DNA of 64,000 bases from positions 62,001 to 126,000 of the forward strand of contig JAXLNO010005853.1 of assembly GCA_038087875.1 (NCBI GenBank), in the 5' to 3' direction. The notes beneath the pieces are model-generated. The model did not search any database, had not been told where the DNA came from, and worked only from the letters and a program-made list of their open reading frames with translations. Below, piece after piece: positions 1 through 58,877 of this stretch. Both the position numbers and the translations under genes were made by a program. The DNA comes from Malacoraja senta (taxonomy: Eukaryota). Every line of letters begins with the position of its first letter. Position 1 is the first letter of the stretch.

Positions 1-592
1 ATGCCAACGGTCACGGGTACAAAATGGCGCCGGTGTCTTCTCGCCCAGAACCGCCGGAGAGGGTGAGGATTATGGAGAGGAGATGGGTGGTATTATGATG
101 GGAGGAGACAGGTGATATAAAGAGAGGAGATGGGTGGTATTATGATTGGAATAGACAGGTGGTATTATGATGGGAGGGTACGGGTTTGGTGGGTTCGTGA
201 GGGGAGGAGAGCTTCCGTGAGCGAACGGGAGAGGTTAAGTTTATTCCTTGGAGCGCAGGAGGATATGGGATGATCTTATAGAGGTGTACAAAATCATGAG
301 AGGAATAGATCGAGTAGACACACAGAGTCTCTTGCCCAGAGTAGGGGAGTCGAGGACCAGAGGACACACGTTTAAGGTGAAGGTGAAAAGATTTAATAGG
401 AATCTGAGGGGTAACTTTTTCGCACAAAGTATGGACGAGCTGCCATAGGAGGTAGTTGAGGCAGGGACTGTCCTAACGTTTAATAAACATTTAGATAGTC
501 ACATGGATAGGACAGGTTTGAGTCCAAATGCAGGCAGGTGGAACTTGTGTAGCTGGGACATGTTGGCCGTTGTGTGGGCAAGTTGGGCCGGA
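1..592. repeat. Outer left-arm segment mirroring 57957-58554
   Basis: Shares diagnostic bases with the 57957-58554 copy (gtgact, taaatg, aataaacttaacc, ggcgccggtgtcttctcg) rather than with the 49780-50350 copy. Confidence 0.85.
245..540 (+). mobile_element. CR1 3' fragment (homologous copies at about 49800-50120 and 57990-58300, -)
   Basis: Motif DLIEVYKIMRGIDRVD..GESRTRGH. Confidence 0.8.
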
Positions 593-922
593 GCCAACAT
601 GCCATTCGCTTTCTTCACTGCCTGCTGAACCTGCATGCTTACTTTCATAGACTGATGTACAAGAACCCCCAGATCCCGTTGTACTTCCCCTTTTCCTAAC
701 TTGATGCCATTTAGATAGTAATCTGCCTTCCTGTTTTTGCTACCAAAGTGGATAACCTCACATTTATCCGCATTAAACTTCATCTGCCATGCATCTGCCC
801 ACTCCCCCAACCTGTCCATGTCACCCTGCATTCTCATAGCATCCTCCTCACAGTTCACACTGCCACCCAGCTTTGTGTCATCTGCAAATTTGCTAATGTT
901 ACTTTGAATCCCTTCATCCAAA
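593..922 (-). mobile_element. CR1 fragment (left-arm copy of 46374-46701, truncated by deletion)
   Basis: Motif SKFADDTKLGGSVNCEED. Confidence 0.9.
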
Positions 923-1989
923 TGGGAAAAGGTGAAGATACAAAGTTTTATTGAGCAGCATGGGGGTAATTGTGAAATGTTCACAGTTCCTTCAGCACTT
1001 GTTCACACATTTCTACCGTAGATCAGATCCACCCTCGTTCTGGACATACCATCTGATAGATCTATTCCATTCACCCTTGGTGTGTCCGCGGGACAGCTCT
1101 TTGAACACCTCCTCGTATAGTGACCTACGAACAGCCAGCAGACCTCTGTCTCCCATTCCATAACACATCTCATGAATTTCCACGAAAACCACCAACCTGA
1201 CAATTCCCCAAACCCATACTGCCTGTTCCACCAGGGGTGGCGCACGATTGGCAGCCCTGCCAACAGTCTTGTCTGTTTTTTCCGACCTTTTTTAAATTTT
1301 TAGTGTGTTTTATAAGTTGTGTAAATGTTCTCCGGTTTGTTATATGTGGTGGGAGGGGGAGGGGGGAGGGGGAAGTCTCTTACCTCGCCGGAGTTACGAT
1401 GATGTCCGGGTCGTACCCCCGGTTGCACTTCGGCCTAATATCAATGGACCTGGAGGCCTCCTCGGATAGACTTTGGAGCCCCTCCGCAGGATGTGGACTT
1501 AACATCGAAGCTGAACCCTTGCCTGGGATTGTTCCAATCGCATCCTGCGGACTTTACCATCGAGCTCGCAGTCGCGCGAGAGGCAGTGTCGGGAGCTCCA
1601 ACGATGCAGAGGTTCGACAAGCCCCAACCCGGGGATCCAATCGCTGCCGCGGGGGTGATGACATCCACCCGATGCATGAGCTGATGATGCGGAGGCCACA
1701 AATGCCGCCGGCTACTGTAGTCAAGATCGTCCCGGCAAAGAAGGGCTCGAGGCCCCGAACCGCAGGAGAGCAAATATGGGAAGAGATTGAACTTTCTTTT
1801 GCCTTCCATCACAGTGAGGAATGTGGAGGAGGAACTGTGGTGGATATTTATGTTAAAATGTATTTTGTGTGTCCATTGCTTTTTATTTGTATGACTGACT
1901 TGACAAATGAAATTCTTCGTATGTTGCAAAACATACTTGGCTAATAAAGTATTATTGTGATTGATTGCAATTGATCTCCTGGAGTGGAA

Positions 1990-2470
1990 AGCCTCTTCTT
2001 GAGATGATTTCAAGATGGGTGATTTCCACTCTAGGAGATCTGGGATGTCCTCCTTTTAGAGGAAACGCAGTTGCCCCCCAAATTCCACAACACCCTACAG
2101 TTGTGGATGATGCCCTCACCTGTGTCTCCTCCATTCGTACAGCTCCCCCCCCCCCTCCCTTCCTCCAGGCAGAACAGGTTTAGAGTTCCCCTGGACCTTA
2201 TCTTTTACCCCACCAGCCTCCACATCCACGAGAACATTTTATGATATTTCCACCAACTTCAACGCGATGCCCACCCCAGGTATTATCTTCATGTCGCTTC
2301 CCATTTCTGCCTTGACAAGAGACCACTTTGCCCCTGCACCCAGGTGCACTTATCCCTCCCACTCACGTCTCCCTTGCCACTGCCACTTTCCCCTGTCACT
2401 GCAAAATGCACTGGACGCAAAGGCCTCAAATTTCACATCTACTGCAACGTTTCCTGAAGGTTTGCAAGTG
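1990..2470 (+). mobile_element. Penelope-like fragment (copies at about 44920-45310 and 51260-51720, -)
   Basis: VVDDALTCVSSIR..RVPLDLIFYPTSLHI resembles the Penelope RT C-terminal region. Confidence 0.65.
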
Positions 2471-5202
2471 TCAAATGCAACAAATGGTGTTTGAGAGAAA
2501 TAAACAAACTACACACCAGTTAGCCTCACACAATTAGCATTTATTTTGCTAGAATCTATACGTGATAACTGCACACTTTGAAAGTTTCAAGGGATTAGAT
2601 AAAATCAATTTGTATTTTAATGAATATAGGAACAGTACAGCACAGGAACAGGCCCTTCCGCCCATCATGACCCTACCAATTTTGATGGCTGGTAAACTAA
2701 CCTCTTCTGCCTACATGTGATCCACATGCCCCCCTTCCCTGTATACCCATGTGTCTATCTAATTGCCTCTACAATGCCCTATCGTATCTGATTCCACTAA
2801 ACCTGGCAGGGCATTCCAGGCCCCATCACTCCATGTAGAAAAAAACCTGCCCCTCATATTAAAACTATACCCTCTAGTCTTTGTCATTTCTACCTGGGGA
2901 AAAGGTTTTGACTGTCTACCTAATCTCTGCTTCTCATAGTTTTTTATACTTCTATCAGATTTTCCCTCAATATCCGACTCTCCAGAGAAAACAATCCAAG
3001 TATGTTCAACCTCTCCTCAGAGCTCATACTTTCTAATCCTGGTAAACCTTTTCTGCACCCTCTCAAAAGAGCTTCCACATGCTTCCTGTACTGGGGCTAT
3101 CAGAACTGCACACATTTTTATTTATTCATGGTTTGACAAACCTGCTCGGAGTTTTTTTCCAAGTATGTAATTGGTAGGAAAATATGAGTAGGTGCAGTGT
3201 AGTTGCATGTTCAGAAGATCTTTAATCAAATACCACATTGAGGTAGGTATGCAAAATTCAAGCACTGATATTGGAGGAATGAAATCTAATAGGAACCAGT
3301 GGGCCGTAGAATGAGGGTGATGGTGTTAAGATATGTGGAAGACAGTTAGGAAAAGGTTTGCATTCACACACCAATCAAATAATAACTTGCCGTTTCATTT
3401 CCCCCTAAAATTGGGTACGTGTACATGAAACACAAGAGACTTGCGTGCAGGTATTGTAAGCAGTTGTAAAGACAAATGGAATGCTGTTTTTTATTGCACA
3501 AGATGAGTGTATGAAAGAAAGGATGTTTTAATGCAACATTACAGGGTACAGTTCCCCCCATCATACTAATTCAGCTAATTTTTTACCCACTCACTTAAAC
3601 CATCTATATGTCTGTGCCGGCCCATTGTGTCCTCATCACTTACTAACCCACCTATCTTTGCATCGTCAGACAGCATCTCTGCAGTACTTTTGGTGCTTTC
3701 ATCCTTTGTTTGCTTCGGATACTCTGTTCCTTTTATATACTTGCAGAAGCTCCTTTTATCCGTTTTATATTTAACAATTTTCTCCATCAATCCTGTCCTC
3801 ATAATTTTTTATGATGTTTACTTCTGTCTTACAATCTCCCAATCCTCTTATAAATAATCTTCTCAATATTACTGTTGGCATTTTCTTTCATTTTGAAACT
3901 ACTTTAGCCAACTGCATCACTCCATTGTAAATGCCTTAATTAAAGTTTAGCAAACCGGCTTCAGACACAAGTGAACTGGGTACCAGATTCTTCAATGTAG
4001 TCATCCCTCTTTACCAGGAGATCTCATCTCATGTTACAAGACGTGCCCAATCCTTGAACCCAACCACCAGTCCAATTTGGGTAAAGCCCATATTCCGGCT
4101 GTTCCGGTAATGGAAATTCTCCCGTGCAGAATTCACAAATCACCAGTGAAAAATTTGAGATGCAGAATAAAATATGCACTCTTGGAATTAGTGCGAAAAA
4201 TATATTATGTGGTTTCAGCTCACACGTAACGCTCCATAATGCAGGGGACACCTGTGATCCACAAGGAAAAGGGAATGTCTCTCCTGAGTGCAAAGGATAC
4301 TCAATGGGTCAGGCGGCATCTGTGCAGAGAGAAAGAGTTCATGCTACTGATTGAATATCTGAGACAATAAAAAAGATTGTTGGTGCAGAAAGAGTGAGAT
4401 AGAGAGAGAGGGACAGCGACAAAGGAATGTCTTATGGGGAGAGGCCTGGTTTCCATAGTAATAAATGATTGACAAAGCTATCTGGGCATTTAGAAAGAGA
4501 CCATGTAGAAACTGCAAATGCAAGCCAGAGCTACAGGAGATGGCCACTGATCAGGCCGTGCCCGTAGAGGGAGGAAAATGTTCATAATGCAGATGGATTA
4601 TCTACAACACAGCTGACCAGCTTTGACACAGACAGAGAAAGTGAGCACACCGATATTGTTGATTGCAGAGTCTAGCCTGGAAAGCTACACCATGCACTGT
4701 TCCGAGTAGTAAATGGTTGAATGGCATGGAAGAGCAGATGATGGAGTCGCAAAGGGAATGGTCCCCTCAGGATGCTGAAAGTGTAGGCAGGTGGAAGATG
4801 TGTCTGTTGGTGTACCCGCACCGATGGTAACAGAAGCTATAAAGGTTGATCCACTGAATGCAGAGACTAGTGGGTGGGAAATGAGGATCAGGGAAATACT
4901 ATTCTTGCTCTGCCTTGGGGAAAGAATTAGCAAAGAAGTTCATGAAAACGATTCAAAGCTGCCAAGGGTCTGTCAGTTAATGTAGAGATTAAACCATGGT
5001 TTAAGATGAAGGAAGACAGCTAAGAGGAATGTGAAATTTGAGTTCTATGTGGATGCAGGAATCTGCAGCAATGCAGTTGCAAATGTATCAGATACACCAC
5101 TGAGGGAGGGGCCGCTGAGTGGGACTGATGTGAGGACAGCTCCATGTACCCCACAGACACATGGTCATAGCTGCGGGAATGTAGCATTGTTTCTCTCCGA
5201 AG

Positions 5203-5669
5203 TTACACTGCCTGATCCACATCACCAGAACCTGCCACTGTCACTGGAGATGCAGCATCCCTCCTGTTGACACCGGCAATGGAGCTGAGATGGTGACGTT
5301 CACCTCTCTTCAACCAGCAGAAAGTGAGGCCAATTATAAGAAAATAGACCGCATAAATGGCAGCCCGAATGGCCAACGCTCTTAGTCCATCCTCGAATAG
5401 GCGGATCACACGCGTGTCTATCTGGTGTTCATTCACAGCCACACACGTGTATTTCCCTGGCAGCCTGGGGTGAAGCAGCTTTCCCACAGTCAGTAGTTCC
5501 TCTGGATGATGCGTGACTGTCGTCTCACTACTGTTCCCGGGCAGTGTGATGTTCCCTGGGCCGATCCACGTGATGTTTGCAGGGGGCTTCCCTTCAGCCC
5601 TGCACACAAGGGTGTGTTCTCCAGTTACATTGTCGTTCACAACAGACAGCTCCAGGATGGTGGCTGGGA
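5203..5669 (-). CDS. C2/TM/tail exon' (left arm)
   Basis: Mirror of 41705-42171; open to the same TAA. Confidence 0.85.
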
Positions 5670-6325
5670 CTTGGAGAAGGAAAAATATCAATTAAATTCA
5701 TTGAATTAATCACTGTTGATGGTGTGTGCGGATAGAGTCCATCTGAATGGGGATTGGAAGAACACACCTAGGAGACTGCAGTGAAATATTTGCAGATATG
5801 ATAGTGTCTTTGAGAAGCACATGGATCTACTGGGAATGGAGGGATATGGATCATGTGTCGGCAGATGATATTAGTTTAACTTACAGTACCATTATATTCT
5901 GCACAGATATTGAGGGCCAAAGGGCCTGTTCCTGTGCTGTACTGTTCTATGTAATAATCAGTGAGAGAACATACAGGTTCCTGGAGTCAATGTGAATGAA
6001 AGAGACGGATGCAAATACCCCAGGGCAGTCTGTGGATCTTTGCAACACAGACCATGCCACAGACACAGGGACTGGAGGTTCAGCAGGTGAATGTGGTTCT
6101 GAATCTCTGATCCTGCTGCAGGGAGCTCCGTGCATCCTGGCAGGAATCAGCACTGTTTTCCAACCACTAGGGGCAGTGCTGAGCAAGGGAAGCCCAGGGC
6201 AAGGAATGGAACCTACAATGGATTGGGTCGATCTCGGCTCCAGCTGTCAGTGGATCTCATGTCCTCTTACAGTTGTTAATGTGATTTTATCGTTCACAGC
6301 ACAACACAGACAGATCTTTCCTTAC

Positions 6326-6688
6326 CCACAACCTCCAGTTTCATCTCATCCTGAGTCACCGTCTCCTGTGTGGAATTCCTGACCCAAACGTAACAGAAAT
6401 AGTCACTGCTGTCGTTCAGTCTGAGCTCCTTCACTCTGATAGAGGCGTCTCCCTGGTCTAGTTTTCCCACCAGCTCATATCGACCTCCTCCCTTTACAGT
6501 GGCAGTGTAGGGAGGGTTCACAGAGTGGGGGTGAGTGTGATTAAAGACTGTGGACTCTTCCCGTGGATTCCCCTTCATCCAGCGGACAGTGATGGGGCTG
6601 GGATTCTTGTTCAAGTTGCTGAAGAAGCAGGGCAGTGTGGCTGAATCTCTTCTCTTCCCAATCACCATGGATGTGTTCTTCTTTCCAT
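6326..6688 (-). CDS. V-set exon 4' (left arm)
   Basis: Mirror of 40686-41048; open frame with intact splice sites. Confidence 0.85.
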
Positions 6689-6921
6689 CTTGTATAGAGA
6701 AAAGTTCTATTTAACAATTTATTCCACATGGTTTATAAAAATACATCACCCATGCCTGTGGCTTTGATTCTCCATCCCACTCCCACTCTGATCTGTCTGT
6801 CTCAGACCTCCTGCACTGTTCTAATGAGGCCCAATCTCAAGTAACAGCACCTCATCTTCTGTCTGGGCAGCATGAAGCCTTTGTGCTAACATTTAAAGCA
6901 ACAATTTTAATAACTTGCTTA

Positions 6922-7324
6922 AGAGCCAGTCCAACATACGCGATTTTGTAGGTGACTACAGGTGACTGGGTAGTCACCACACGGTCGCCGGGTGTCACCT
7001 GTATGGTTGTGAGTCGTCTCCTTAAGTCGCCCAAAGAGCCGTAGCATTTTTCTGGTCACCGCTGCATTTTGAAATGGTGAAAACCTTTCGGCGACACTCG
7101 GCGACCTTGGGCTTGTCGTAGCTTGTCTTCTCCTGACGTTGATGCTGTCGTAGGTTGTCACCAGGATAACGTATGTTGTCGCCAGGATAACGTAGGTTGT
7201 CGCCGGTGCTGACCTCAATTCAATTGGCGACTACCTACGTCAACCTACGTCAACCGGCGACAGGTACCGGCGTCAAGAGAAGTCTTCAGTTGTCTTCAGT
7301 TGTCACCAAAGTGGGACAGGCCCT
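6922..7324. mobile_element. PIF/Harbinger-like MITE
   Basis: TIRs agagccagtcc and agggcctgtcc (reverse complement), TTA TSD on both sides, internal ggcgac repeats. Confidence 0.7.
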
Positions 7325-7379
7325 TTACTGTTTGTATAAGAACTGGCCAGAACTGCCTCAGAAGTCAATAGTACCTGAC

Positions 7380-7595
7380 CCATACCACCATAACCATAGG
7401 CTGATGACAATATCACTGGAGATGCCACAAGACTCCCGTCAACACCAACATTGGAGATGAGACAGTGACGTTCACCTCTGTTCAAACATGAGAAAGTGAA
7501 GCCAATTGCAAGAGTACAGTCCACATAAGTGGCAGCTCAAATATCAAACCCACTCATGGGCTGTAGTGTGCTTATTGAAAATGCAAGAGTATCAT
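7380..7595 (-). pseudogene. Decayed TM exon (left-arm mirror)
   Basis: Reverse complement of 39775-39990; lies in ORF 7303..7524. Confidence 0.7.
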
Positions 7596-7877
7596 GAGGA
7601 GGGCAGATAAACGTAGAACTGCCGAAAGATTCTGCAATTTTTAATCTAAATACAGATATAGGCAGAGAAATGGCAGATGGAGTTTGATCTGAACATGTGT
7701 GAAGTGTTGACTTTGGGAGGTTGAATGCAAGTGGAAAGTAGACAAGGGCAAGACCCTTAAAACCACTGATGTACAGAAAAATATTGGGATCCAATTCCAT
7801 AACTCCCTGAAAATGGCAACATGTTAAAAACGTGTACAGTATTCTTGTTTAATTGGTCAAGGTACTGAATACAAGAT

Positions 7878-8087
7878 GTGTAGGAAGGAACTGCAGATGC
7901 TGGTTAAAACCGAAGATGGACACAAAAAGCTGGAGTAACTCAGTGGGACAGGCAGCATCTCTGGAGAGAAGGATGGGTCACGTTTTGGGTTGGGAAGAAG
8001 ATACTCAACCCAAAACGTCATCCATTCCTTCTCTCCAGAGATGCTACCTGTCCCGGTGAGTTACTCCAGCTTTTAGTGTCGATCTAC
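7878..8087. repeat. Penelope-derived inverted-repeat hairpin (mirror at about 39285-39492)
   Basis: About 75-bp arms (gctggagtaactca..cgttttgggttg and caacccaaaacg..tgagttactccagc) around a short loop. Confidence 0.75.
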
Positions 8088-8089
8088 TG

Positions 8090-8640
8090 AATACAAGAGT
8101 CAGGAAGTCATGTTGTAGCTCTATACAACTTTAGTTACGACACTGGGATTATTGCATTCAGTTTTATGTGCAGTTCTCACCCATTACAGGAAGGATGTGG
8201 AGACTTTGGAAAGGGTTCAGAAGAGGTTTACCAGAATGCTGCCTGGATTAGAGGGTATTAGTTATATGAAAAGGTCGGACATACTTGAACTGCTTTCTCT
8301 GGACTGTTGAAAGTTTATAAAAATATGAAAGACATGGATAGGAGAGAGAGTCAGAACCTTTTGCCTGTGGCAGAAATGTCAATGAATAGACGGTATTGTG
8401 ATAAGGACAGAAGGGAAAAGATGAAAGGAGATATGTGGGGAAAGTTATTGTTTACACAGAGGGTGGTGGGTGCCAGGAAAATACTGCTAGGGGTGGAGGT
8501 GGAGGCAGCTACGATAGTGGAGTTTTAGAGGCTTTTTGAAATGCAGGTAATGGAAGAAATGTATCACCTGCAGGTAGACGAGATCAACGTAGCATCATGT
8601 TCGGTACAGACATTGCGGGCCAAAGGGCCTGTTCCTGTGC
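8090..8640 (+). mobile_element. Older CR1 3' fragment (mirror at about 38730-39280)
   Basis: Degenerate LERVQRRFTRMLPGL and KVYKNMK motifs. Confidence 0.7.
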
Positions 8641-8726
8641 TGGTCTACGCTGTCACTGGGAGCTCATTCCTCTTAAGGTTGTTCAATATGATATTATCGT
8701 TTTCAGCATAACATACGTTTCCTTAC

Positions 8727-9089
8727 CCACAACCAGCAGTTTCATCTCATCCTGAGTCACAGTCGTCAACGTTGAAGTCCTGACATAAACATGACAGGAG
8801 TAATCACTGGCGTCACCCAGTTTGAGTCCCTTCACTCTGATGGAGGCATCTCCCTGCTCAAGGTTTCCCACCAGCTCATATCGATCTTCTTCATTTACAT
8901 TTTCAGGAATGCGATGTCCTGCTGGGCGGGGAGAAGTGTGACGAAAGACAACAGACCATTTAGGTGGATTCCCCTTCATCCAGCTGATGGTGATGGGGCT
9001 GGGATTCCTGTTTGAGGGACTGAAGGAGCAGGGCAGTGTGGCAGTCGCACCCTTCCTTCCAATCACTATGGATGCTCTGTCATTATCAC
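8727..9089 (-). CDS. V-set exon 3' (left arm)
   Basis: Mirror of 38281-38643; open frame with intact splice sites. Confidence 0.85.
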
Positions 9090-9450
9090 CTTGCATAGAG
9101 AAGAGTTTTAAAGTGTGAATATGATTTAGTATTTGAATACAATAAGCACACGGTCTTTATCAATAGTTCATCCATACTTGTGACTTGGATTGTCCATCCC
9201 ATTCTCACTCTGATCCATCTGTTCCTGACCTCCTGCACTATTCTAATAAGGGCCAATCTCAAGTAAAGACATCTCAGCTTCAGTCTGGGCAAGATGGAGC
9301 CTTGACCTTGAAGACCAGGAACCAGAGAGGAGGATGGAGGGTGACTAAAGGAGCGGTTAACTGAATTAGGAGGGGTGGGGGGGTGGGGGTCTTAGGGTCT
9401 GCACCCGAAGCTCATCTGAGGGAGGCACGGTTCATAGGATCTTACGCGAT

Positions 9451-47325: not shown

Positions 47326-48237
47326 CCATTCCCGCCCCAGCTTTTGCTGACTTTTACAGGATGATATTATAGAACACGATTCACCAAGAGAATCAGATGA
47401 AAAGGCAGCCCTTTCGTACCATGACAGGAAAATAAAATGACTCCTTGACAAATAACAAGAGCAACACAGTAGACTGTAAATCAAATGGCAGTAAAGTTGA
47501 GGAAGGGGAGAAGACCAGGGTGGGGACATTAAAAAATGGAGCACTGTGAGCAGAGGTGCAAGGTTCAGCCACTGATTCTGGATGTTTCTCTCTGTAGGGG
47601 AGACATTCAGGAAAGGGCTTAGACTGGAGTGGAGAAATTGTACAAATATCAAGCTGCCAACAGAAATTGTTGAATAATTCATAGACATAGATCACACAGA
47701 GCACAGGAACAGGCACTCGGCCCATTTCCTCCATTCTGACCATCCAATGCCCTCCAGTACTGATCCTACTTACCTGCACTTAGTCCACGAAGGGGAAGGG
47801 GAGGCGGTGGTTGGATTCACTCGCGTTCTAGAAACTTCCACGGACGCCCAGCTTCCATCACACCACACGGTCAGGCCAGCAGGCTATGTTTCCTCCGGAT
47901 TTCTCCCTATCCCTCTTAATCTCTCCTTATCCCTCTGGATCTCTTCCTCTCCCTCAGGATCTCTTACTCAAGACCTCTCCATCTTCCTCAGGATCTGTTT
48001 CCTCCAACAGGAGTACTCGTTCTCCCTCAGGATCTCTCCCTACTCTCTAGGCCTCCACCAACCACCCACAGCTGGAGCGGCAACCATGGTGCACCATCTC
48101 TCCATCCCAGCGACCACCCGCACTCCCTTCACAAACCCTCCCCCTCTCTCACAAACTCACCCATCAGTCTTCTCTACTCACAAACTCACCCATCCCCTCC
48201 CCTCAGAAATCCACTCTGAGAACGTCAAAGAGTGACA

Positions 48238-49753
48238 CATAGATCATTTTCCAATGTTCAATAGATTCAGGATCAGTTCCTGTGGATTGGAGGATAGCTA
48301 ATGTTATCCCACTTTTCAAGAAAGGAGCGAGAGAGAAAACGGGGAATTACAGACCAGTTAGCCTGACTTCGGTGATGGGAAAGATGCTGGAGTCAATTAT
48401 TAAAGATGTAATAATGGGGCATTTGGATAGTAGCAAAATGATTAGTCCAAGTCAACATGGATTTATGAAAGGGAAATCATGCTTGACTAATCTTCTGGAC
48501 TTTTTTGAGGATGTGACAAGTAAAATGGATGAAGGGGTGCCAGTGGATGTAGTGTATCTAGACGTTCAGAAAGCCTTTGATAAGGTCTCGCACGGGAGAC
48601 TGGTGACTAAAATTGGAGCACATGGTATTGGGGGTAGGGTGTTGACATGGATAGAAAATTGGTTGGCAGACCGGAAGCAAAGAGTAGGAGTGAACGGGTC
48701 CTTTTCAGAATGGTAGGCAGTGGCGAGTGGAGTGCCGCAAGGCTCGGTGTTGGGGCCGCATCTGTTTACCATATATATTAATGATTTGGAAAAGGGAATT
48801 AGGAGCAACACTAGCAAGTTTGCGGATGACACAAAGCTGGGTGGCAGTGTGAACTGTGAAGAGGATGTTAGGAGGTTGCATGGTGACCTGGACAGGTTGA
48901 GTGAGTGGGCAGATGCGTGGCAGATGCAGTATAATATAGATAAATGAGAGGTTATCCACTTTGGCGGCAAAAACAAGGAGGCAGATTATTATCTCAATGG
49001 GGTTAGGTTAGGTAAGGGGGAGGTGCAGCGAGACCTGGGTGTCCTTGTACACCAGTCACTGAAAGTTGGCATGCAGGTACAGCAGACAGTGAAGAAAGCT
49101 AATGGAATGTTGGCCTTCATAACAAGAGGATTTCAGTATAGGAGTAAAGAGGTTCTTCTGCAGTTGTATGGCGCTCTGGTAAGACCACATCTGGAGTATT
49201 GTGTGCAGTTTTGGTCCCCTAATTTGAGGAAGGCATCCTTGTGATTGAGGCAGTGCAGCGTAGGTTCACGAGATTGATCCCTGGGATGGCGGGACTGTCA
49301 TATGAGGAAAGATTGAAAAGACTAGGCTTGTATTCACTGGAGTTTAGAAGGATTAGGGGGGATCTTATCGAAACATATAAAATTCTAAAAGGACTGGACA
49401 AGCTAGATGCAGGAAAAATGTTCCCAATGTTGGGCGAGTCCAAAACCAGGGGCCACAGTCTTAGAATAAAGGGGAGGTCATTTAAGATTGAGGTGAGAAA
49501 AAACGTTTTCACCCAGAGAGTTGTGATTTTATGGAATTCCCTGCCACAAAGGGCAGTGGAGGCCAAATCACTGGATGGATTTAAGAGAGAGTTAGATAGA
49601 GCTCTAGGGGCTAGTGGAGTCAAGGGATATGGGGAGAAGGCAGGCACGGGTTATTAATAGGGGACGATCAGCCATGATCACAATTAATGGCGGTGCTGGC
49701 TCGAAGGGCCGAATGGCCTCCTGCACCTATTTTCTATGTTTCTATGTTTCTAT
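48238..49753 (+). mobile_element. 5'-truncated CR1 LINE
   Basis: Motifs NYRPVSLTS, QHGFMKGKSCLTNL, VPQGSVLGP and KFADDTK, with in-frame stops; (ctatgttt)n tail; gaca TSD; empty site near 57935. Confidence 0.95.
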
Positions 49754-52700
49754 GACACAGCGTGGAAACAGGCCCTTCGGCTTAACTTGCTCACACACCG
49801 GCCAAAATGACCCAGCTACCAGTTCCACCTGCCTGCGTTTGGAACCAAACCTGTCCTATCCATGTGCCTGTCTAACTGTTTCTTCAACGTTAGGACAGTC
49901 CCTGCCTCAACTACCTCCTCTGGCAGCTCGTCCGTACTTTGTGCGAAAAAGTTACCCCTCAGATTCCTATTAAATCTTTTCACCTTCACCTTAAACGTGT
50001 GTCCTCTGGTCCTCGACTTCCCTACTCTGGGCAAGAGACTCTGTGTGTCTACCCGATCTATTCCTCTCATGATTTTGTACACCTCTATAAGATCATCCCT
50101 CATCCTCCTGCGCTCCAAGGAATAAACGTAACCTCTCCCTTTTGCTAACGGAAGCTCTCCTCCCCTCACGAACCCACCAAACCCTTACCCTCCCATCATA
50201 ATACCAACTGTCTATTCCTATAATAATACCACCCATCTCCTCCCATCATTATACCGCCCATCTCCTCTCCATAATCCTCACCCTCTCCGGCGCGGGGAAG
50301 GTTCTGGGCACGAATACACCAGCGCCATTGTGTACCCGTGACCTTTGGCAACGCGTGGGCGCGGCGGGGAGCGACGGGTCGAGTGGCGGCGAGGAGCGGC
50401 CTCCCTCGGCGGGAAGGAGGGAGGACGGGAGAGAGCCGGTGGGTTTCCGAGAGGGATGGGCGACGGTGACGGGCCAAAGCACCGTGAGTGGAGCCGCCAT
50501 CTCTCAGGCCCTGGGACCCCGGGGTCGGGTCCCGGCATCCCGAGCTGTCTGTGTGGAGCTCGCAACCTTGTCCCCGGCAGCGATCTCCGCTTCACTGCCA
50601 CACACATGAGTCGATGGCTCACTGTTATCAATGATTTTCGTGTAATGCCCGGCAGAAACAGCCCCTTCGGCCCACTGTGTCCGTACTGACCATCAGGAAA
50701 CCATGTACACTGTGTGTAGAAATATCGCAAACATGGGAGCAGTCTTGACCTACCATCAACCTCATTAGAGACTCTAGAACTATCTTTTATTGGACTTTAC
50801 TGGAATTTACCTTGCACTAATGGTTATTCCATTTATCCTGCATTTGTACACTGTGAACGACTCGGTCATGTGTAGTCTTTTTTGCTGACTGCTTTTTTGC
50901 TTAACATATGATAGGTTTACAAGAATGATCCCAGGAATTAGTAGGTTAACATATGATGAGCATTTGACGCATTGGGCCTGTACTCGCTGGAGTTTAGAAG
51001 AATGAAGGGGTGACCATCATTGAAACGAACAGAATAATGAAAGGCTTGGACAGAATGGATGTGGGGAGGATGTTTCCAATAGTGAGATAGTCCAGGACTA
51101 GAGATCATAGCCTCACAAAGCGTGCTGTTATCACACCTATAGATTCTACCAAAATAAATGCTAATTGTGTGAGGCTAACTGGTGTGTAGTTTGTTTATTT
51201 CTCTCAAACACCATTTGTTGCATTTGAAACTTGCAAACCTTCAGGAAACGTTGGAGAAGAAGACGTGAAATTTGGGGCCATTGCGTCCAGTGCATTTTGT
51301 GGTGACAGTGGAAAGTGGCAGTGGCATGGGAGACGTAAGTGTGGAGGGGATGAGCGCACCTGGGAGCAGGGGCAAAGTGGTCTCATGTCAAGACAGAAAT
51401 GGGAGGCGACATGAAGATAAGACCTGAGGTGGGCATCACGTTGAAGTTGGTGGAAATTTCATAGAATGTTCTCATGGATGTGGAGGCTGGTGGGGTAAAA
51501 GATAAGGTCCAGGGGAACTCTAAACCTGTTCTGCCTGGGGGAAGGGAGGGGGGGGGGAGCTGTACGAATGGAGGAGACACAAGTGAGGGCATCATCTACA
51601 ACTGTATGGTGTTGTGGAGTGTGGGGGGCAACCGCGTTTCCTCTAAAAGGAAGACAACCCAGATCTTCTAGGGTGGAAATCACCCATGTTGAAATCATCT
51701 CAAGAAGAGGCTTTCCACTCCAGGAGATCGCAATCAATCAATCACAATAATACTTTATTAGCCAAGTATGTTTTGCAACATACGAGGAATTTCATTTGTC
51801 AAGTCAGTCATACAAATAAAAAGCAACGGACACACAAAATACATTTTAACATAAACATCCACCACAGTGTCTCCTCCACATTCCTCACTGTGAAGGAAGG
51901 CGAAAAAAAGTTCAATCACTTCCCTTATTTGCTCTCCCGCGGTCGGGGGCCTCGAGCCCTCCGTTGACAGGATGATCTTGACTCCTTTAGCTGGTGGCAT
52001 TTGGGCCCTCCGCATCATCAGCTCCTGCGTCGGGAGGATGTCAGCTCCCCCCGCCGGCGATCGGACCCCCGGGTCTGGGCTGCTCGAACCTCTGCGTCGT
52101 TGGAGCTCCTGACCCGGCCTCTCCCGAGACTGCAAGCTCGATGGTAAAGTCCGCAGGCCGCGATTGGAGCGATCCCAGGTAAGGGATCAGATTCGATGTT
52201 AAGTCCACGACCTGCACAGGGTCCCTAAAGTCAGTCCGAGGAGGCCTCCAGCTCCACTGATGTTAGGCCGCAGAGCGACTGGAGATATGACCCCGAAAAC
52301 ATGGCTTCTCCGGCAAGGTAAGAGACTGAAAAATAAAGTTTCCCCCTCCCCCTTACTCCTCCCCCCTCATAAAACAAACCGGAGAACATTTACAGAAACT
52401 TTAAAAACACACTAAAAATTATAAAAAGGACAGCAAAACAGACACGACTGTTGGCGGGGCTGCCAATCGTGCGCCACCCCTGGTGGTACAGGCAGTATGG
52501 GTTTGGGGAATTGTCAGGTTGGTGGTTTTCGTGGAAAGTGATGAGGTGTTATGGAATGGGAGACAGAGGTCTGCTGGCTGTTCATAGGTCACTATACGAG
52601 GAGGTGTTCAAAGAGCTGTCCCGTGGACACACCAAGGGTGAATGGAATAGATCTATCAGATGGTATGTCCAGAACGAGGGTGGATCTGATCTACGGTAGA

Positions 52701-54188
52701 AATGTGTGAACAAGTGCTGATGGAACTGTGAACATTTCACAATTACCCCCATGCTGCTCAATAAAACTTTGTATCTTCACCTTTTCCCATGCCCACCCCA
52801 GCTTTTGCAGACTTTTACAGGACGATTTTATAGAATACGATTCACCAAGAGAATCAGATGAAAAGGCAGCCCTTTCGTACCAGGACAGGAAAATAAAATG
52901 ACTCCTTGACAAATAACAAGAGCAACACAGTAGACTGTAAATCAAATGGCAGTAAAGTTGAGGAAGGGGAGAAGACCAGGGTGGGGACATTAAAAAAGGG
53001 AGCACTGTCAGAGCCGGATTTACGTATAAGCTTGACAAGCTTAAGCTTAGGGCCTCGAGATCTAGGGGGGCCTCGCAGAGCCAGATTTACCACTAGGCTT
53101 CATAGACTGAAGCTTTGGGCCTCGAAATCTAGGGGGCCTCTGGCCAAGGCAGGACACCTGGCGTTCAACTCTGGGCGGGCCCCCCTCTCTATCTCTCTCT
53201 CTCTCTGTCTGTCAATCTCCGTCTCCGCCCGCCATCCGTATCCGTGTCCAGGCCGCCGGGTCTCCGCTCTCCGCTCGCTCCTCATCCGCCGGCACGGCAG
53301 GCCGCCTAGCACATGCGCACTGCTACGGCCAGCACATCCTCCCCCCTGCACATGCGCACAACCACGGCCCTCACATCATCGGCCGCCCTGCACATGTGCA
53401 CTGCCACGGCAACTGGTCAGCGCTGGGCACTTTCTCCCTCCCTTTGAATTGTGGGAGATCTGGCCGCCATTGCTGTCCGGTCGCCACCTCGCCACGACCG
53501 CTGAAAACCAACTCAGAATCACTCCCTGAACCTGGATCTGGAGCAACTCCCTGGAGTAACTCTTGCTTCTGGTTTCCTGGTCCTCCATAAATATTCTAAA
53601 TGGAATGTAAACTGGAGGTGGTGGAGGGCGGAACAATAACAGCCTATTGCATTTTATCTGTTTATTTATTATGTATATATATGGTCTAAGGTATATAAAC
53701 ACACTGAACTTTTATCTCCTGTTCTGTATTATGTTGACATATTCTGTTGTGCTGCAGCAAACAAGAATGTCATTGTCCTATCTGGGACACATGACAATAA
53801 AACTCTCTTGACTCTTGACTTGGACTTAAGCAAAAAAGGGTTCTAGGGGAAAAAGGAGGTACCTTAAATTTAGTTGTGTCTGGTTGGGTAACTATGGTAG
53901 GGTGAAGACTATTCCATGCTTTAATTGTGCGGGGGAACTCCATGGAGCAGCCAGTAACTGGATAGAAAAAATTGGGTGACGTTTTGGGTAGAGACCCTTC
54001 TTTAGAATCCCTCTGGTTTTAGTGATTTTAGTTTAATTTAAAGATACAGCGTGGAAACTGGCCCTTTGACCCACCGAGTCCACGCCGACCACCGATCACC
54101 CGTACACTAGTTCTATCCCACACATTAGCGGAGTAAGTCAAGAGTCAAGAATGTTTTATTCTCTCACATCCCAGTTAGAACAATGAAA

Positions 54189-54423
54189 NNNNNNNNNNNN
54201 NNNNNNNNNNNNNNNNNNNNNNNNNNNNNNNNNNNNNNNNNNNNNNNNNNNNNNNNNNNNNNNNNNNNNNNNNNNNNNNNNNNNNNNNNNNNNNNNNNNN
54301 NNNNNNNNNNNNNNNNNNNNNNNNNNNNNNNNNNNNNNNNNNNNNNNNNNNNNNNNNNNNNNNNNNNNNNNNNNNNNNNNNNNNNNNNNNNNNNNNNNNN
54401 NNNNNNNNNNNNNNNNNNNNNNN
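54189..54423. other. Assembly gap (235 N)
   Basis: Run of N. Confidence 1.
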
Positions 54424-55094
54424 NGTTCTATCATATAGTATCGTGTGTGTAGGAACTGCAGATGCTGGTTTAAACTGAAGATAGACACAAAAAGCTGGAA
54501 TAACTCAACAGGTCAGACAGAATCTCTGGACAAAAGGAAAATATTACGTTTTGGGTTGGGTCTGAAAGGTTCCTGCACACCTTTGGAATGTGGAAGGAAA
54601 CAAGAGCACCCGGAGAAAACCCACGCGATCAAAGAGAAAAGGAGCAAACTCCATACAGACAGCGCCCATATTCAGGATCAATTCCGGGTCTCTGGCACTT
54701 TTAGGCAGCAGCTTTATGGCAAATGTACTGCCCCATAATCTTGAACTTAATTAAAACATACAGTAGCTGTAAAGGGGGACATAGCGTCACTTGGAGATTT
54801 AAAACTGAAAATGAATATTTTCCTTTTCTTAGTAACCAAAGTTATCAATGTATAATTTTTTGTGTGTTGGAAAACAAAATATAGTGGCACAGCTGGTAGA
54901 CTTGCTGTCTCACACGCCAGAGATCTGTGTTTGATCCTGTCCTCAGGCACTGTCTGTGTTGAATTTGCACATTCTCCCTGTAAGCGTGTGGGTTTCCTCC
55001 CACATCCCAAAGATGCATTGGCTTTGTAGGTTAACTTGTCTCTGTAAAATTGCCCCTAATATGTAGGGAGTGGATAAGGAAAGTGGGATAACTG

Positions 55095-56222
55095 AACTTG
55101 TGTGAATGGGTAGACAAAAATGCTGGAGATACTCAGCGGGTGAGGCAGCATCTATGGAGCGAAGGAAATAGGTGACGTTTCGGGTCGAGACCCTTCTTCC
55201 TACTGATGTGAGGGTGGGGGGGACGGGAAGAAGAAAGGAAGAGGCGGAGACAGTGGGCTGAGGGAGAGCTTGGAAGGGGAGGAGAAAGCAGGGATTACCT
55301 GAAATTGAAAAGTCAATGTTCATACCGCTGGGGTGTAAACTGCCCAAGCGAAATATGAGGTGCTGCTCCTCCAATTTACAGTGGCCTCACTCTGGCCATG
55401 GAAGAGGCCCAGGACAGAAAGGTCGGATTCGGAATGGGAGGGGGAGTTGAAGTGCTGAGCCACCGGGAGATCAGGTTGGTTATTGCGGACTGAGCGGAGG
55501 TGTTGGACGAAGCGATCGCCAAGCCTATGCTTGGTCTCACCGATATAGAGCAGCTGACACCTAGAGCAGTGGATGCAATAGATGAGGTTGGAGGAGGTGC
55601 AGGTGAACCTCTGCCGCACCTGGAAAGACTGCTTGGGTCCTTGAATGGAGTCAAAGCAACAAGTGTTTGGGTGGTTTGGGTGGTAAGGGACGAATTGACC
55701 AGGGTGTTATGGAGGGAGCGGTCTCTGCGGAAAGCCATCAGGGGAGGAGATGGGAAGATGTGGCCAGTGGTGGGTCCCATAGGTAGACAAAAAAGCTGGA
55801 GAAAAATCACCGGGTAAGGCATCATCTATGGAGCGAAGGAATAGACGACGTTTCGGGTCGAGACCCTTCTTCAGATTGATGTCGGGGGGGGGACATGAAA
55901 AAGAAAGGAAGAGGTGGAGACAGTAGGCTGTGGGAGAGCTGGGAATGGGCGAGGAAGGAGGGAGAAAGCAAGGACTACCTGAAATTAGAGAAGCCAATGT
56001 TCATACCGCTGGGGTGTAAACTACCCAAGCGAATATGAGGTGGAGCTCCTCCAATATGCGATGGCCCTCACTCTGGCCATGGAAGAGGTCCAGGACAGAA
56101 AGGTCGGATTCGGAATGGGAAGGGGAGTTGAAGTGTTGAGCAACCGGGAGATCAGGTTGGTTATTGTGAACTGAGTAGATGTGTTGTGCGAAGCGTTCGC
56201 CAAGCCTGCGCTTGGTCTCACC
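55095..56222 (-). mobile_element. Two tandem Penelope-like 3' fragments (GIY-YIG endonuclease)
   Basis: ORF 55320..55619 reads NLIYCIHCSRCQLLYIGETKHRLGDRF..HL; a partial repeat lies at 56001-56222. Confidence 0.85.
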
Positions 56223-57489
56223 AAGGTTGATCATACGCTGAATAATCCAACCACATTTCTGTTTGGAAGTGGAAAGAAATAATAGAAATTGCATTCATTG
56301 CAACGTGTAAAAAGAGTTGAGATACTGTATTATAATTTTGCTGTGTGTCATTGTGGTATATATCATGTCTTGATTGGTGAATATGTTTAGTTTGTGACTT
56401 TATTTGAAGCAAAAATATGTAAATGCTTCATTGAGCATAATTCCATCTGGTAACAACGCACTTCGTCCGAACACATTATCGCACGCGTCATGCAAGCCGT
56501 CTTAAATGACGACCTAAACTGACATTTGGCAACTTAAAAAGCTGCCAAGGTTGCCCGGCTGATAACGGAGAAAAAAAAATAAGTGAGATCCCTGCAAGGT
56601 GTATGATATTTTTGAAACTGTCATAGGCATTTCTTACATACGCTGTCACAACGCACTGTAGTATCTAAACAACCCTTCAGTAATTTTCCTTGCCCTCCAT
56701 TTCAGAATAATAGTGTTTTAAGCCAATAACTCAACACTAGCACTGGCAATAAATAAATAAATAAAAAAGCGCGGCTTTCCAGCCCCTTATCTCATTGGCA
56801 ACGCTCGGCTGCAAATCGGTGTCAATCTGGTGGACCATCTTCCTCTAGTCGTGGGGGTGGGGGATTGGGAGGGCCCTCACAAGTGGAACAGCTTAGGGCC
56901 TCTCTTCATCTAATCCGGCCCTGAGCACTGTGAGCAGAGTTGCAAGGTTCAACCATTGATTCCGGATGTTTCTCTCTGTAGGGGAGACATTCAGGATAGG
57001 GCTTAGACTGGAGTGGAGAAGATTGTAGAAATATCAAGCTGCCAACAGAAATTGTTGAATATTTCATAGACATGGATCACACTGAGCACAGGAACAGGCA
57101 CTCGGCCCATTACCTCCATTCTGACCATCCAATGCCCTCCAGTACTGATCCTACTTACCTGCACTTAGTCCACGAAGGGGAAGGGGAGGGGGTGGGTGGA
57201 TTCACTCGCGTTGTAGAAACTTCCACGGACACTCAGCTTCCATCACACCACACGGTCAGGCCAGCAGGCTATGTTTCCCCCGGATTTCTCCCTATCCCAC
57301 TGGATCTCTCCTTATCCCTCTGGATCTCCCCCTCTCCCTCAGGATCTCTTACGCAAGACCTCTCCATCTTCCTCAGGTTCTGTTTCCTCCATCAGGAGCA
57401 CTCGTTCTCCCTCAGGATCTCTCCCTTCCCTCTAGGCCTCCACCAACCACCCACAGCTGGAGCAGCAACAATGGTACACCATCTCTCCA

Positions 57490-57918
57490 TCCCCAGCGAC
57501 CACCCGCACTCCCTTCACAAACCCTCCCCCCCTCTCACAAATTCACCCATCCAGTCTTCTCTACTCAAACCCTCCCGTTCCCTCCCCTCACAAACTCACC
57601 CATCCCCTCCCCTCACAAACTCACCCATCCCCTCCCCTCACAAACCCATCCAGTCCCCTCCCCTCACAAACACATCCCACTCCCTGCCCTCACAAACCCA
57701 TCCAGTCCCCTCCCCTCACAAACCCATCCCGTCCCCTCCCCTCACAAACCCATCCCGTCCCCTCCCCTCACAAACACATCCCATCCCTGCCACTCTCCTC
57801 ACAAACCCTCCCATCCCCTCCTCTCACAAACTCACCCATCCCCTCCCCTCCATAATCCACCCATCGCCTCTCCCCACAAACCCTCCCATCTCGTCCCCTC
57901 CCCTCACAAATCCACTCT
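57490..57918 (+). repeat. C/A-rich minisatellite (~20-bp ccctcccctcacaaacccat), expanded in unit 2
   Basis: About 430 bp here versus about 110 bp at 48105-48215 in unit 1. Confidence 0.85.
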
Positions 57919-58877
57919 AAGAACGTCATAGAGTGATACAGCGTGGAAACAGGCCCTCCGGCCCAACCTGCCCACACACCGGCCAACATGTCCCAGCTAC
58001 ACTAGTTCCACCTGCCTGCGTTTGGACCCAAACCTGTCCTATCCATGTGACTGTCTAAATGTTTATTCAATGTTAGGACATTCCCTGCCTCAACTACCTC
58101 CTCTGGCAGCTCGTCCATACTTTGTGCGATAAAGTTACCCCTCAGATTCCTATTAAATGTTTTCACCTTCACCTTAAACGTGTGTCCTCTGGTCCTCGAC
58201 TCCCCTACTCTGGGCAAGAGACTCTGTGTCTACCCGATCTATTCCTCTCATGATTTTGTACACCTCTATAAGATCATCCCTCATCCTCCTGCGCTCCAAG
58301 GAATAAACTTAACCTCTCCCTTTCGCTCACGGAAGCTCTCCTCCCCTCACGAACCCACCAAACCCGTACCCTCCCATCATAATACCACCTGTCTATTCCA
58401 ATCATAATACCACCCATCTCCTCTCTTTATCCCACCTGTCTCCTCCCATCATAATACCACCCATCTCCTCTCCATAATCCTCATCCTCTCCGGCGCGGGA
58501 AAGGTTCTGGGCGAGAAGACACCGGCGCCATTTTGTACTCGTGACCGTTGGCAATGCGTGGGCGTGGAGGGGAGCGACGGGCCGAGTGGCGGTGAGGAGC
58601 GGCCACCCTCGGCGGGAAGGAGGGAGGACAGGAGAGAACCGGTGGGTTTCCGAGGGGGATGGGCGAAGGCCGGTGAGGCGGTCAGCGGGGCAGGTCGCCG
58701 GGGACGGTCCGAAGCACCGCGAGTGAAGCCGCCACCGCCGCTGCCTGTCAGGCCCAGGGACCCCGGGGTCGGGTCCCGGCCTCCTGAGCTGTCGGTGTGG
58801 AGCTCGCAACCATCTCCACTTCCTTCCTACACACGTGAGTCGATGTCTCACTGTTATCAATGATCTTCCTGGTAATG

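What the first reader, a model, noticed from the sequence alone, without database searches (positions are those of the whole stretch)
1..58554. Palindrome of more than 21 kb per arm with head-to-head receptor copies; real duplication or haplotype mis-join?
Seen: 593-22061 mirrors 24734-46701, and 1-592 mirrors 57957-58554, so the symmetry runs off the left edge of the window. The arms differ by scattered substitutions, small indels (for example ~50 bp near 11280 and ~70 bp near 2350-2420) and two large structural differences. Inference: these independent lesions fit a true palindrome with history. However, the left arm ends in an N gap at the centre, which is also the typical signature of a falsely duplicated haplotig.
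Basis: partly seen in the sequence, partly recalled or inferred. Interest (0 to 1): 0.75.

Follow-up and report, generated by a model that had tools for sequence, protein, structure and literature searches.

The report
Probable uncollapsed haplotype, not a palindrome
The mirror-image pair of immune-receptor genes in this skate sequence is really there in the assembly, but it is most likely the two parental versions of one gene stitched together back-to-back across assembly gaps. It is probably not a true giant palindrome in the chromosome.

Summary
Bases 593-22061 mirror 46701-24734 (21,275 aligned columns, 98.05% identity, 415 substitutions, 42 indel events). Bases 2-593 mirror 58553-57956 at 95%. 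Each arm carries a Siglec-15-like receptor gene (four V-set exons, then a C2+TM exon), with the 5' ends facing the centre.

I favour an assembly artefact (about 0.7): two alleles of one locus, joined in inverted orientation.
- The left arm stops exactly at a 200-N gap. The right contig stops inside the gene's own upstream polypurine tract, which Amblyraja also has.
- The differences are natural and symmetric (141 left-derived, 141 right-derived).
- In the only two other samples holding this sequence, contigs form one path mixing left and right letters, including derived letters of both lineages.
- Where both letters survive as separate contigs in the deep sample, three left-derived letters and one ancestral left letter sit at 12-17%, not 50%. 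The arm differences therefore segregate and are not fixed between two loci.
- The 1.95% divergence matches the 1.56% heterozygosity published for the little skate. That this window is little skate is my inference.
- Amblyraja has no inverted copy within 9.4 kb upstream of its orthologue.

Absolute copy number could not be measured, so a real young inverted duplication remains possible (about 0.25-0.3). Scan notes list many similar duplications across 200-N gaps in this genome.

The parts
1..22061 (-). Left arm (copy L). 593-22061 is collinear with the right arm; 1-592 continues the mirror after an 11.25-kb deletion relative to R. It ends at an assembly gap.
22062..22261 (.). 200-N assembly gap at the inner end of the left arm. 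The letters on either side are not continuous.
22262..22585 (+). 324-bp GA-rich island between two gaps; its orientation in the scaffold is arbitrary.
22586..22785 (.). Second 200-N gap, inside GA-rich low complexity.
22786..24370 (+). 1.6-kb polypurine (GA-rich) tract contiguous with the right arm. It is the gene's own upstream tract. Amblyraja L005 has a 1.6-kb tract (36001-37600) 0.6 kb upstream of where homology starts (38234), on the same strand relative to the gene.
24371..24733 (+). 363 bp of a dispersed ~960-bp repeat ('T1'; other copies at 46372-47323 and 48784-49745). It has no mirror only because the left contig ends.
24734..46701 (+). Right arm (copy R), collinear with 22061-593.
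25445..26098 (+). 654-bp piece present only in R. It is ancestral (present in Amblyraja L003 and L005), so L carries a derived deletion.
25937..25985 (+). Leader (signal-peptide) exon: ATG, hydrophobic MLFILLCAFALPVTA, then a GTAAGT donor. It is the only copy in the window and matches the N-terminus of Amblyraja LOC116971577. Copy L lacks it.
28120..28508 (+). V1 exon of copy R (Siglec-type V-set; approximate ends). Its mirror in L is about 19270-18907 on the minus strand.
34897..35271 (+). V2 exon ORF of R (mirror in L 12539-12159). 8 amino-acid changes and a 2-codon in-frame indel between the copies.
38274..38687 (+). V3 exon ORF of R (mirror in L 9096-8683).
40706..41080 (+). V4 exon ORF of R (mirror in L 6668-6294).
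41683..42171 (+). C2-set plus transmembrane exon ORF of R (mirror in L 5691-5203). 17 nonsynonymous differences between the copies.
46702..57955 (+). 11.25-kb piece present only in R. It holds an older (~90% identity) tandem repeat of the gene's 3' flank (44951-50463 versus 51116-58666) and the 236-N gap 54189-54424. L looks like a deletion running from inside a T1 copy (L position 593) to 57956.
57956..58554 (+). Continuation of the right arm, mirroring 593-2 at 95%.
2354..2415 (-). 62 bp present in L, in the third copy (51116-52790) and in the outgroup runs, so R carries a derived deletion. Both forms appear in sample X23; only the deleted form is seen in X24.
11281..11327 (-). 47 bp present only in L.

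Best explanation
The 'palindrome' is a false (heterotype) duplication. The two arms are the two parental haplotypes of one Siglec-15-like receptor locus.

Inferred steps:
- The assembler failed to collapse the haplotypes because they differ by about 2%, with several indels and an 11-kb structural variant.
- Both contigs broke at the same hard-to-read place, a ~960-bp dispersed repeat followed by a >=1.6-kb polypurine tract just upstream of the gene.
- The scaffolder then placed the second haplotype next to the first in inverted orientation, bridging them with placeholder gaps.

Shown here:
- the mirror itself;
- its end at a gap;
- the natural, symmetric substitution pattern;
- the fact that the arm differences are not fixed in other samples;
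- the absence of an inverted partner within 9.4 kb upstream of the Amblyraja orthologue.

The true locus would then be a single gene (leader, V1-V4, C2+TM) behind a polypurine tract. One allele (L) would carry a 654-bp deletion of the leader exon and an 11.25-kb deletion in the 3' flank.
For: 1. The left arm ends exactly at the 200-N gap. The centre holds two gaps and a 324-bp island.

2. The apparent spacer is contiguous with the right arm only. It corresponds in position and strand to a 1.6-kb polypurine tract upstream of the Amblyraja unit in L005. Both contigs therefore stop at the same genomic feature.

3. Divergence is 1.95% overall (0.2-4.8% per kb). Transitions:transversions is 1.14, close to the 1.17 (123:105) counted between species in run X1. 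Derived changes are split 141 left: 141 right. This is real, equal-age sequence divergence, not sequencing error.

4. The level matches the 1.56% heterozygosity reported for the little skate. That genome was built from noisy long reads and purged of haplotigs only at whole-contig level (PMC10115646). The VGP paper describes exactly this error class, and notes that Purge_Haplotigs misses partial duplications at contig boundaries (PMC8081667).

5. Contigs of the only two samples holding this sequence (X23, X24) form one path over the unique parts of 300-6299.
- The path differs from L by 1.2-1.5% and from R by at least 1.0-1.8%, where L and R differ by 2.5-3.1%.
- All 28 listed differences at an L/R site carry the R letter.
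- The path also keeps L letters at many sites, and it carries derived letters of both lineages.

6. Where both letters survive as separate contigs in the deep sample X24, three L-derived letters (3275, 3513, 3675) and the ancestral L letter at 3654 have depths of 19-27 against 135 (12-17%). At 2066/2069 and 5636 the split is about 40:60. The 62-bp indel shows both forms in X23 but only the R form in X24. Fixed paralogous differences would give 50% everywhere.

7. In the control run X1 several positions show 2-4 contigs. So multiple copies, when present, can show up in this kind of data.

8. Amblyraja L003 has no inverted arm in the 9.4 kb upstream of the orthologous leader region. In L005 the upstream neighbour is a unit in direct orientation.

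9. Unverified scan notes list many duplications across 200-N gaps in this genome, including internal exons of conserved genes.
Against: 1. Absolute copy number was not measured. Every depth ratio I could read fits one heterozygous locus and two homozygous loci equally well: the two forms sum to the flank depth, and the third copy sits at 0.37-0.49 of the arm total.

2. Logan contigs pop bubbles, and each contig carries one mean depth. A single path therefore does not prove a single sequence. Only 40 of 458 differences were listed, so agreement between X23 and X24 cannot be quantified.

3. X23 and X24 are coded runs of unknown library type. Minor fractions of 12-30% suggest pools. I cannot show that they are individuals other than the reference animal.

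4. The family really does duplicate. Amblyraja has at least three loci in - + - orientation that are 92-98% identical to each other. Rhinoraja has at least seven genes. A real 98% paralogue is therefore plausible.

5. The species of the window is inferred, not shown, so the heterozygosity match is conditional.
Confidence: 0.7

Rival explanations
1. A real, young, tight palindrome. An inverted duplication of at least 22-34 kb of the receptor unit arose in this skate lineage after its split from Amblyraja, with a breakpoint at the upstream polypurine tract. The arms have since diverged by 2% and partly exchange sequence by gene conversion.
For: - Both copies keep all five Ig exons open.
- The family is expanding, with near-identical paralogues in both orientations in Amblyraja and many copies in Rhinoraja.
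- The third copy, which lies in the R-only segment, has 0.37-0.49 of the summed depth of the two arm forms in X24 and X23, close to the 0.5 this model predicts.
- Minor branches in X23 near 25-30% would fit four copies per diploid.
- A long inverted repeat with a polypurine centre would also break an assembly.
Against: - The arm differences are not fixed. L-lineage derived letters sit at 12-17% in X24, the other samples carry a mixture of both lineages' derived letters, and the 62-bp indel differs between samples.
- Those samples would then have nearly identical arms, while the reference chromosome has arms that differ in every block. Efficient conversion and 2% divergence do not go together.
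- Copy L lacks the only leader exon.
- There is no inverted partner at the Amblyraja orthologue.
- No sequence crosses the centre.
Confidence: 0.18
2. Two real paralogues in head-to-head orientation that are not a tight palindrome. The placeholder gaps hide an unknown and possibly large stretch, as with Amblyraja LOC116971575 (-) and LOC116971577 (+), whose 5' ends are about 200 kb apart.
For: - Amblyraja has a - + - arrangement, with paralogues 92-98% identical.
- Gap lengths here are placeholders (finding note).
Against: - L and R are collinear over the whole 21.5 kb and beyond, including shared lineage-specific repeat insertions, and are equidistant from every Amblyraja paralogue. They split after the species did.
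- The same non-fixation evidence applies as for the tight palindrome.
- Amblyraja paralogues are only patchily similar to each other outside the gene body.
Confidence: 0.1
3. A fold-back artefact: a chimeric long read with a missed adapter, or an assembler turning back at a contig end, so that one molecule was written twice in opposite directions.
For: Inverted symmetry sits exactly at a contig end beside a gap.
Against: - The arms differ by 415 substitutions with a natural spectrum, split 141:141 by outgroups.
- They also differ by a 654-bp deletion and a 62-bp deletion, each derived on a different arm, and by an 11.25-kb structural difference.
- Letters of both arms are found in other samples.
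- One molecule read twice would give near-identical arms.
Confidence: 0.02

Closest known systems
Heterotype false duplication (retained haplotig) in primary genome assemblies, as described by the Vertebrate Genomes Project (PMC8081667)
   Same: - Two copies at allelic-level divergence sit in a highly heterozygous, repeat-rich genome.
- One copy ends at a gap.
- The locus is a fast-evolving immune gene cluster.
- If this is the little skate, the assembler pipeline purged only whole contigs.
   Different: - The copies lie inverted rather than in tandem.
- Half-depth, the usual proof, was not measured here.
Large genomic palindromes kept alike by arm-to-arm gene conversion (for example the ampliconic palindromes of mammalian sex chromosomes; my own knowledge)
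   Same: Inverted arms of tens of kb with a short centre and a gene in each arm.
   Different: - Arm identity here is 98%, not above 99.9%.
- The differences segregate among samples.
- One arm lacks the first exon.
- No molecule is shown to cross the centre.
- The centre is the gene's ordinary upstream tract.
Siglec-15-like receptor cluster of skates (Amblyraja radiata LOC116971575/577/578; Rhinoraja longicauda 'sialic acid-binding Ig-like lectin 15' genes)
   Same: - Same gene unit (leader, V-set exons, C2+TM exon).
- DNA identity to the arms is 90-95% for Amblyraja and 86-91% for Rhinoraja.
- Members occur in both orientations.
   Different: In those assemblies the paralogues lie 200-340 kb apart or in tandem. 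None forms a tight head-to-head mirror within the flanks I could read.

Membership tests
False haplotig (heterotype) duplication | The duplicated block abuts a contig end or assembly gap. | tested here: met
   The left arm ends at 22061|22062 (N). The right contig ends inside the GA tract at 22786.
False haplotig (heterotype) duplication | Divergence between the copies is at the level of allelic heterozygosity of the species. | tested here: inconclusive
   Divergence is 1.95% here, against 1.56% published for the little skate. Other-sample contigs differ from L by 1.2-1.5%. The species of the window is inferred only.
False haplotig (heterotype) duplication | Each copy is at half the diploid read depth in the sequenced individual. 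| not testable with these tools
   Only one read-laying run of at most 6 kb was available, on contigs, with no single-copy control in the stretch.
False haplotig (heterotype) duplication | Differences between the copies behave as alleles in other individuals (variable frequency, recombinant haplotypes). | tested here: met
   In X24, L letters are at 12-17% at 3275, 3513, 3654 and 3675, and about 40:60 at 2066/2069 and 5636. The 62-bp indel differs between X23 and X24. Contigs carry derived letters of both lineages. Caveats: the data are bubble-popped contigs and the samples are of unknown make-up.
Genuine palindrome / inverted segmental duplication | Two inverted arms of high identity. | tested here: met
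   98.05% identity over 21,275 columns.
Genuine palindrome / inverted segmental duplication | Both arms are present in every genome copy, with differences fixed between the arms (or arms near-identical through conversion). | tested here: not met
   Letter frequencies are far from 50% at four of seven informative sites in X24. The reference arms are 2% apart, while the other samples show one mixed path.
Genuine palindrome / inverted segmental duplication | Continuous sequence or single molecules cross the centre. | not testable with these tools
   The centre holds two N gaps, and short-read contigs cannot span the 1.6-kb GA tract.
Genuine palindrome / inverted segmental duplication | The same arrangement at the orthologous locus of relatives (if old). 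| tested here: not met
   There is no inverted arm in the 9.4 kb upstream of Amblyraja L003, and the L005 neighbour is in tandem. Consistent with this, the arms split after the species did.
Siglec-15-like Ig receptor (the gene carried by each arm) | N-terminal V-set domain, membrane-proximal C2-type Ig domain, and a transmembrane segment with a basic residue. | tested here: met
   Pfam finds V-set in four exons and Ig_3/Ig_2/I-set/C2-set_2 in the last. The TM stretch contains Arg. The best named relatives are annotated Siglec-15 at 84% identity. Having four V-set exons is not the canonical one-V architecture. Sialic-acid binding was not tested.

The most novel reading that the evidence does not exclude
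A genuine, young (about 2% diverged) inverted duplication of at least 22-34 kb in a skate immune-receptor cluster. Its symmetry centre is a kilobase-scale polypurine tract, so the duplication could have been triggered by fork stalling or breakage at a triplex-prone tract. One arm has already lost its leader exon, and the arms exchange sequence often enough that their differences are polymorphic.
Probability: 0.2. Interest if true: 0.5.

Novelty: not a real feature. Interest (0 to 1): 0.2.

Why it matters
If the mirror is an artefact, this skate has one receptor gene here, not two. In that case gene counts for this expanded Siglec-15-like family in the assembly are inflated. Ideas built on the mirror, such as a shared leader between invertible cassettes or palindrome-driven gene conversion, lose their basis.

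What remains of biological interest is allelic. Two haplotypes of an immune receptor differ at 38 nonsynonymous against 13 synonymous sites. One of them lacks the signal-peptide exon and 11 kb of flank, which would be a presence/absence-type polymorphism.

The case also flags a class of error (duplications across 200-N gaps) that scan notes suggest is common in this genome and should be screened before any copy-number claim.

Tried and rejected
1. Depth-based copy number. The only read-laying run used Logan contigs over an arm stretch with no single-copy control. Every ratio I could extract is predicted equally by one heterozygous locus and by two homozygous loci, so I could not use depth to decide.

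2. Word shares from the two run searches (0.67/0.67 and 0.57/0.74 for the left and right stretches). These fit a single mixed path and also a bubble-popped pair, so they are not decisive.

3. Agreement between X23 and X24 at arm differences. It could not be quantified because only 40 of 458 differences were listed. In the worst case the counts force the observed overlap.

4. Looking for the arms' exon ORFs in public assemblies by exact sequence (10 ORFs). None is on record.

5. Finding the window's own annotated proteins, or reading beyond the window. Three protein searches returned only relatives. The L. erinacea Siglec-15 protein P0010 has no encoding contig on record. The species therefore stays inferred: about 7% from Amblyraja radiata and about 10% from Rhinoraja longicauda.

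7. Fold-back chimera. Rejected because of the symmetric, natural divergence and because each arm carries its own derived deletions.

8. X23/X24 as a single-copy outgroup carrying only ancestral letters. Rejected because their contigs carry derived letters of both arms.

9. Sequencing error as the source of the differences. Rejected on three grounds: the ts:tv ratio equals the interspecies value, derived changes are split 141:141, and both letter sets occur in other samples.
Full report
**What is in the sequence**

The window has three N runs: 22062-22261 (200), 22586-22785 (200) and 54189-54424 (236).

Self-BLAST shows that 593-22061 is the reverse complement of 46701-24734, in four collinear blocks of 94.8, 97.4, 98.4 and 93.1% identity. 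2-593 is the reverse complement of 58553-57956 at 95%.

A global alignment of the arms gives:
- 21,275 aligned columns and 415 substitutions (1.95%);
- 221 transitions and 194 transversions;
- 42 indel events, including 62 bp present only in the left arm (2354-2415), 47 bp only in the left arm (11281-11327), and 654 bp only in the right arm (25445-26098).

The right arm also has 11,254 bp (46702-57955) that the left arm lacks. Divergence is uneven: 2-5% per kb in the outer 6 kb, and 0.2-0.6% per kb around 14.6-19.6 kb.

**The genes**

Each arm carries one Ig-superfamily receptor unit, with its 5' end toward the centre.
- Four exons score as V-set and the last as C2/I-set Ig followed by a transmembrane stretch.
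- The closest named relatives are 'sialic acid-binding Ig-like lectin 15' genes of Rhinoraja longicauda (84% on the last exon) and uncharacterized genes of Amblyraja radiata.
- All five exon ORFs are open in both copies. They differ at 38 nonsynonymous and 13 synonymous sites and by one in-frame 2-codon indel.
- The true leader exon lies at 25937-25985: ATG, a hydrophobic signal peptide and a GTAAGT donor, matching the Amblyraja N-terminus. It sits inside the 654-bp right-only piece and occurs only once in the window.
- That piece is present in Amblyraja, so the left copy carries a derived deletion of its only signal-peptide exon.

**The centre is not a neutral spacer**

- The 1.6-kb GA-rich tract 22786-24370 is contiguous with the right arm.
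- In Amblyraja locus L005, a 1.6-kb polypurine tract lies 0.6 kb upstream of the start of homology with the arm, on the same strand relative to the gene. The tract therefore belongs to the gene unit.
- The right contig simply ends inside its own upstream tract.
- The left contig ends about 363 bp short of where its own tract should begin, inside a copy of a ~960-bp dispersed repeat.
- The 324-bp GA island between the two gaps has the wrong strand to be the left arm's continuation.

Both contigs thus break at the same hard-to-read feature and are joined only by placeholder Ns.

**The outer end**

I compared the arms with Rhinoraja L001/L002 and Amblyraja L005.
- The right-only 11.25 kb contains an older tandem repeat of the 3' flank (about 90% identity between units).
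- The left arm looks like a deletion from inside a repeat copy (position 593) to 57956.
- The block order in the relatives supports 1-592 as the true continuation of the arm, so the mirror is open-ended on the left.

**Age and nature of the differences**

I used Amblyraja and Rhinoraja as outgroups.
- 141 differences are derived on the left copy and 141 on the right; 8 fit neither, and 125 have no outgroup.
- The transition:transversion ratio (1.14) equals the 1.17 (123:105) seen between species in the laid contigs of run X1.
- Each copy has its own derived deletion: 654 bp in L and 62 bp in R.

These are two real sequences of equal age, not one molecule read twice and not polishing noise. Both copies are equidistant from each Amblyraja paralogue and share lineage-specific repeat insertions, so they split after the species did.

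**Other samples**

Only two coded runs, X23 and X24 (one organism, two samples, one 2023 study), hold most 31-mers of either arm. The shares are 0.67/0.57 for the left stretch and 0.67/0.74 for the right. All other runs are relatives about 5-7% away.

I laid Logan contigs on 300-6299.
- Each of X23 and X24 gives one contig path through the unique parts.
- That path differs from the left arm by 1.2-1.5% and from the right arm by at least 1.0-1.8%, where the arms differ by 2.5-3.1%.
- All 28 listed differences at an arm-difference site carry the right-arm letter. Individual contigs nevertheless carry only some of the differences in their range, for example 13 of 16, 9 of 21 and 1 of 5.
- Counting against polarity, the contigs must hold derived letters of both lineages.

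Bubble popping could produce a mixed path from a sample that holds both sequences. The stronger evidence is where both letters survive as separate contigs in the deep sample X24.
- Left letters at 3275, 3513, 3654 and 3675 (three of them left-derived) have depths of 19-27 against 135, that is 12-17%.
- At 2066/2069 the split is 61:88, and at 5636 about 41:59.
- The 62-bp piece is seen in both forms in X23 (9.0 and 5.4) but only in the deleted form in X24 (148).

Differences fixed between two loci would sit at 50% everywhere, so the arm differences are segregating variants.

If two loci existed, most chromosomes in these samples would have nearly identical arms, while the reference chromosome would have arms that differ in every block. 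One locus with several haplotypes explains the same data without that contrivance.

**Context**

- The little skate paper reports 1.56% heterozygosity, a hybrid assembly from noisy long reads, haplotig purging by whole-contig coverage, Hi-C scaffolding and gap closing. Its chromatin libraries were made from fins of several embryos (PMC10115646).
- I could not prove that the window is little skate. It is a skate about 7% from Amblyraja radiata and about 10% from Rhinoraja longicauda.
- Notes of this scan, unverified, list many tandem and inverted duplications across 200-N gaps in the same genome. They include duplicated internal exons of conserved genes and other inverted copies of Siglec-like genes.

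**What keeps the real-duplication reading alive**

- Amblyraja has at least three loci of this gene in - + - orientation over 640 kb, 92-98% identical to one another. Rhinoraja has at least seven genes. Recent real duplication and sequence exchange do happen in this family.
- The third copy in the right-only segment has 0.37-0.49 of the summed arm depth, near the 0.5 expected if both arms are in every chromosome.
- Absolute copy number was never measured.
- In the flanks I could read, the relatives show no tight head-to-head mirror. The 9.4 kb upstream of the Amblyraja orthologue L003 holds no inverted arm.

**Verdict**

- The mirror is real in the assembly.
- It is most likely an uncollapsed haplotype joined in inverted orientation (about 0.7).
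- A real young inverted duplication, tight or with hidden distance, keeps about 0.25-0.3.
- A fold-back chimera is excluded.
- The decisive tests are read depth and long-read continuity in the reference individual, and genotyping of single animals.

Noticed in passing
window 25937-25985 (within 25445-26098): The only signal-peptide exon of the receptor in the whole window lies in the 654-bp piece that the left copy has lost by a clean deletion. The left copy therefore has intact Ig exons but no leader.
   Followed up: yes
window 44951-50463 versus 51116-58666: An older tandem duplication (about 90% identity) of the gene's 3' flank sits inside the right-only 11.25-kb segment. Rhinoraja L001 has a single unit.
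   Followed up: partly
window 5203-5691 / 41683-42171 and the V exons: The two copies differ at 38 nonsynonymous against 13 synonymous sites, and exonic divergence (2.5%) exceeds non-exonic (1.9%). The C2+TM exon alone has 17 amino-acid changes. There is no sign of purifying selection between the copies.
   Followed up: partly
window 593-923, 21585-22061, 24371-25139, 46372-47323, 48784-49745: A ~960-bp dispersed repeat ('T1') recurs at both arm ends and in the flank, and also in the Amblyraja and Rhinoraja loci. Position 593 is an edge of very high-copy repeat in all four runs laid.
   Followed up: partly
window 62796-63486: A 30-bp tandem repeat of 23 copies at 87% identity (unit begins CTTGCGGACTCACAG...).
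   Followed up: no
window 57566-57900: A C-rich 26-bp tandem repeat of 13 copies.
   Followed up: no
L003 1701-2800 and 3801-4800; L005 31901-32400 and 36001-37600 (Amblyraja radiata chr CM021368.1): Kilobase polypurine/polypyrimidine tracts lie upstream of the Amblyraja gene units too. They are purine-rich on the sense strand in L005 but pyrimidine-rich on the sense strand in L003, which suggests local inversions around these tracts.
   Followed up: no
L005 8910-30564 and 38234-51298: The annotated Amblyraja gene LOC116971575 (33.7 kb, 518 aa) spans the tail of one receptor unit and the head of the next tandem unit. The gene model probably merges two genes.
   Followed up: no
window 922 (X23 record 9): An X23 contig matching 922-1257 runs on for 207 letters unlike the repeat that both arms have at 593-923. 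This hints at a haplotype without that repeat insertion.
   Followed up: no
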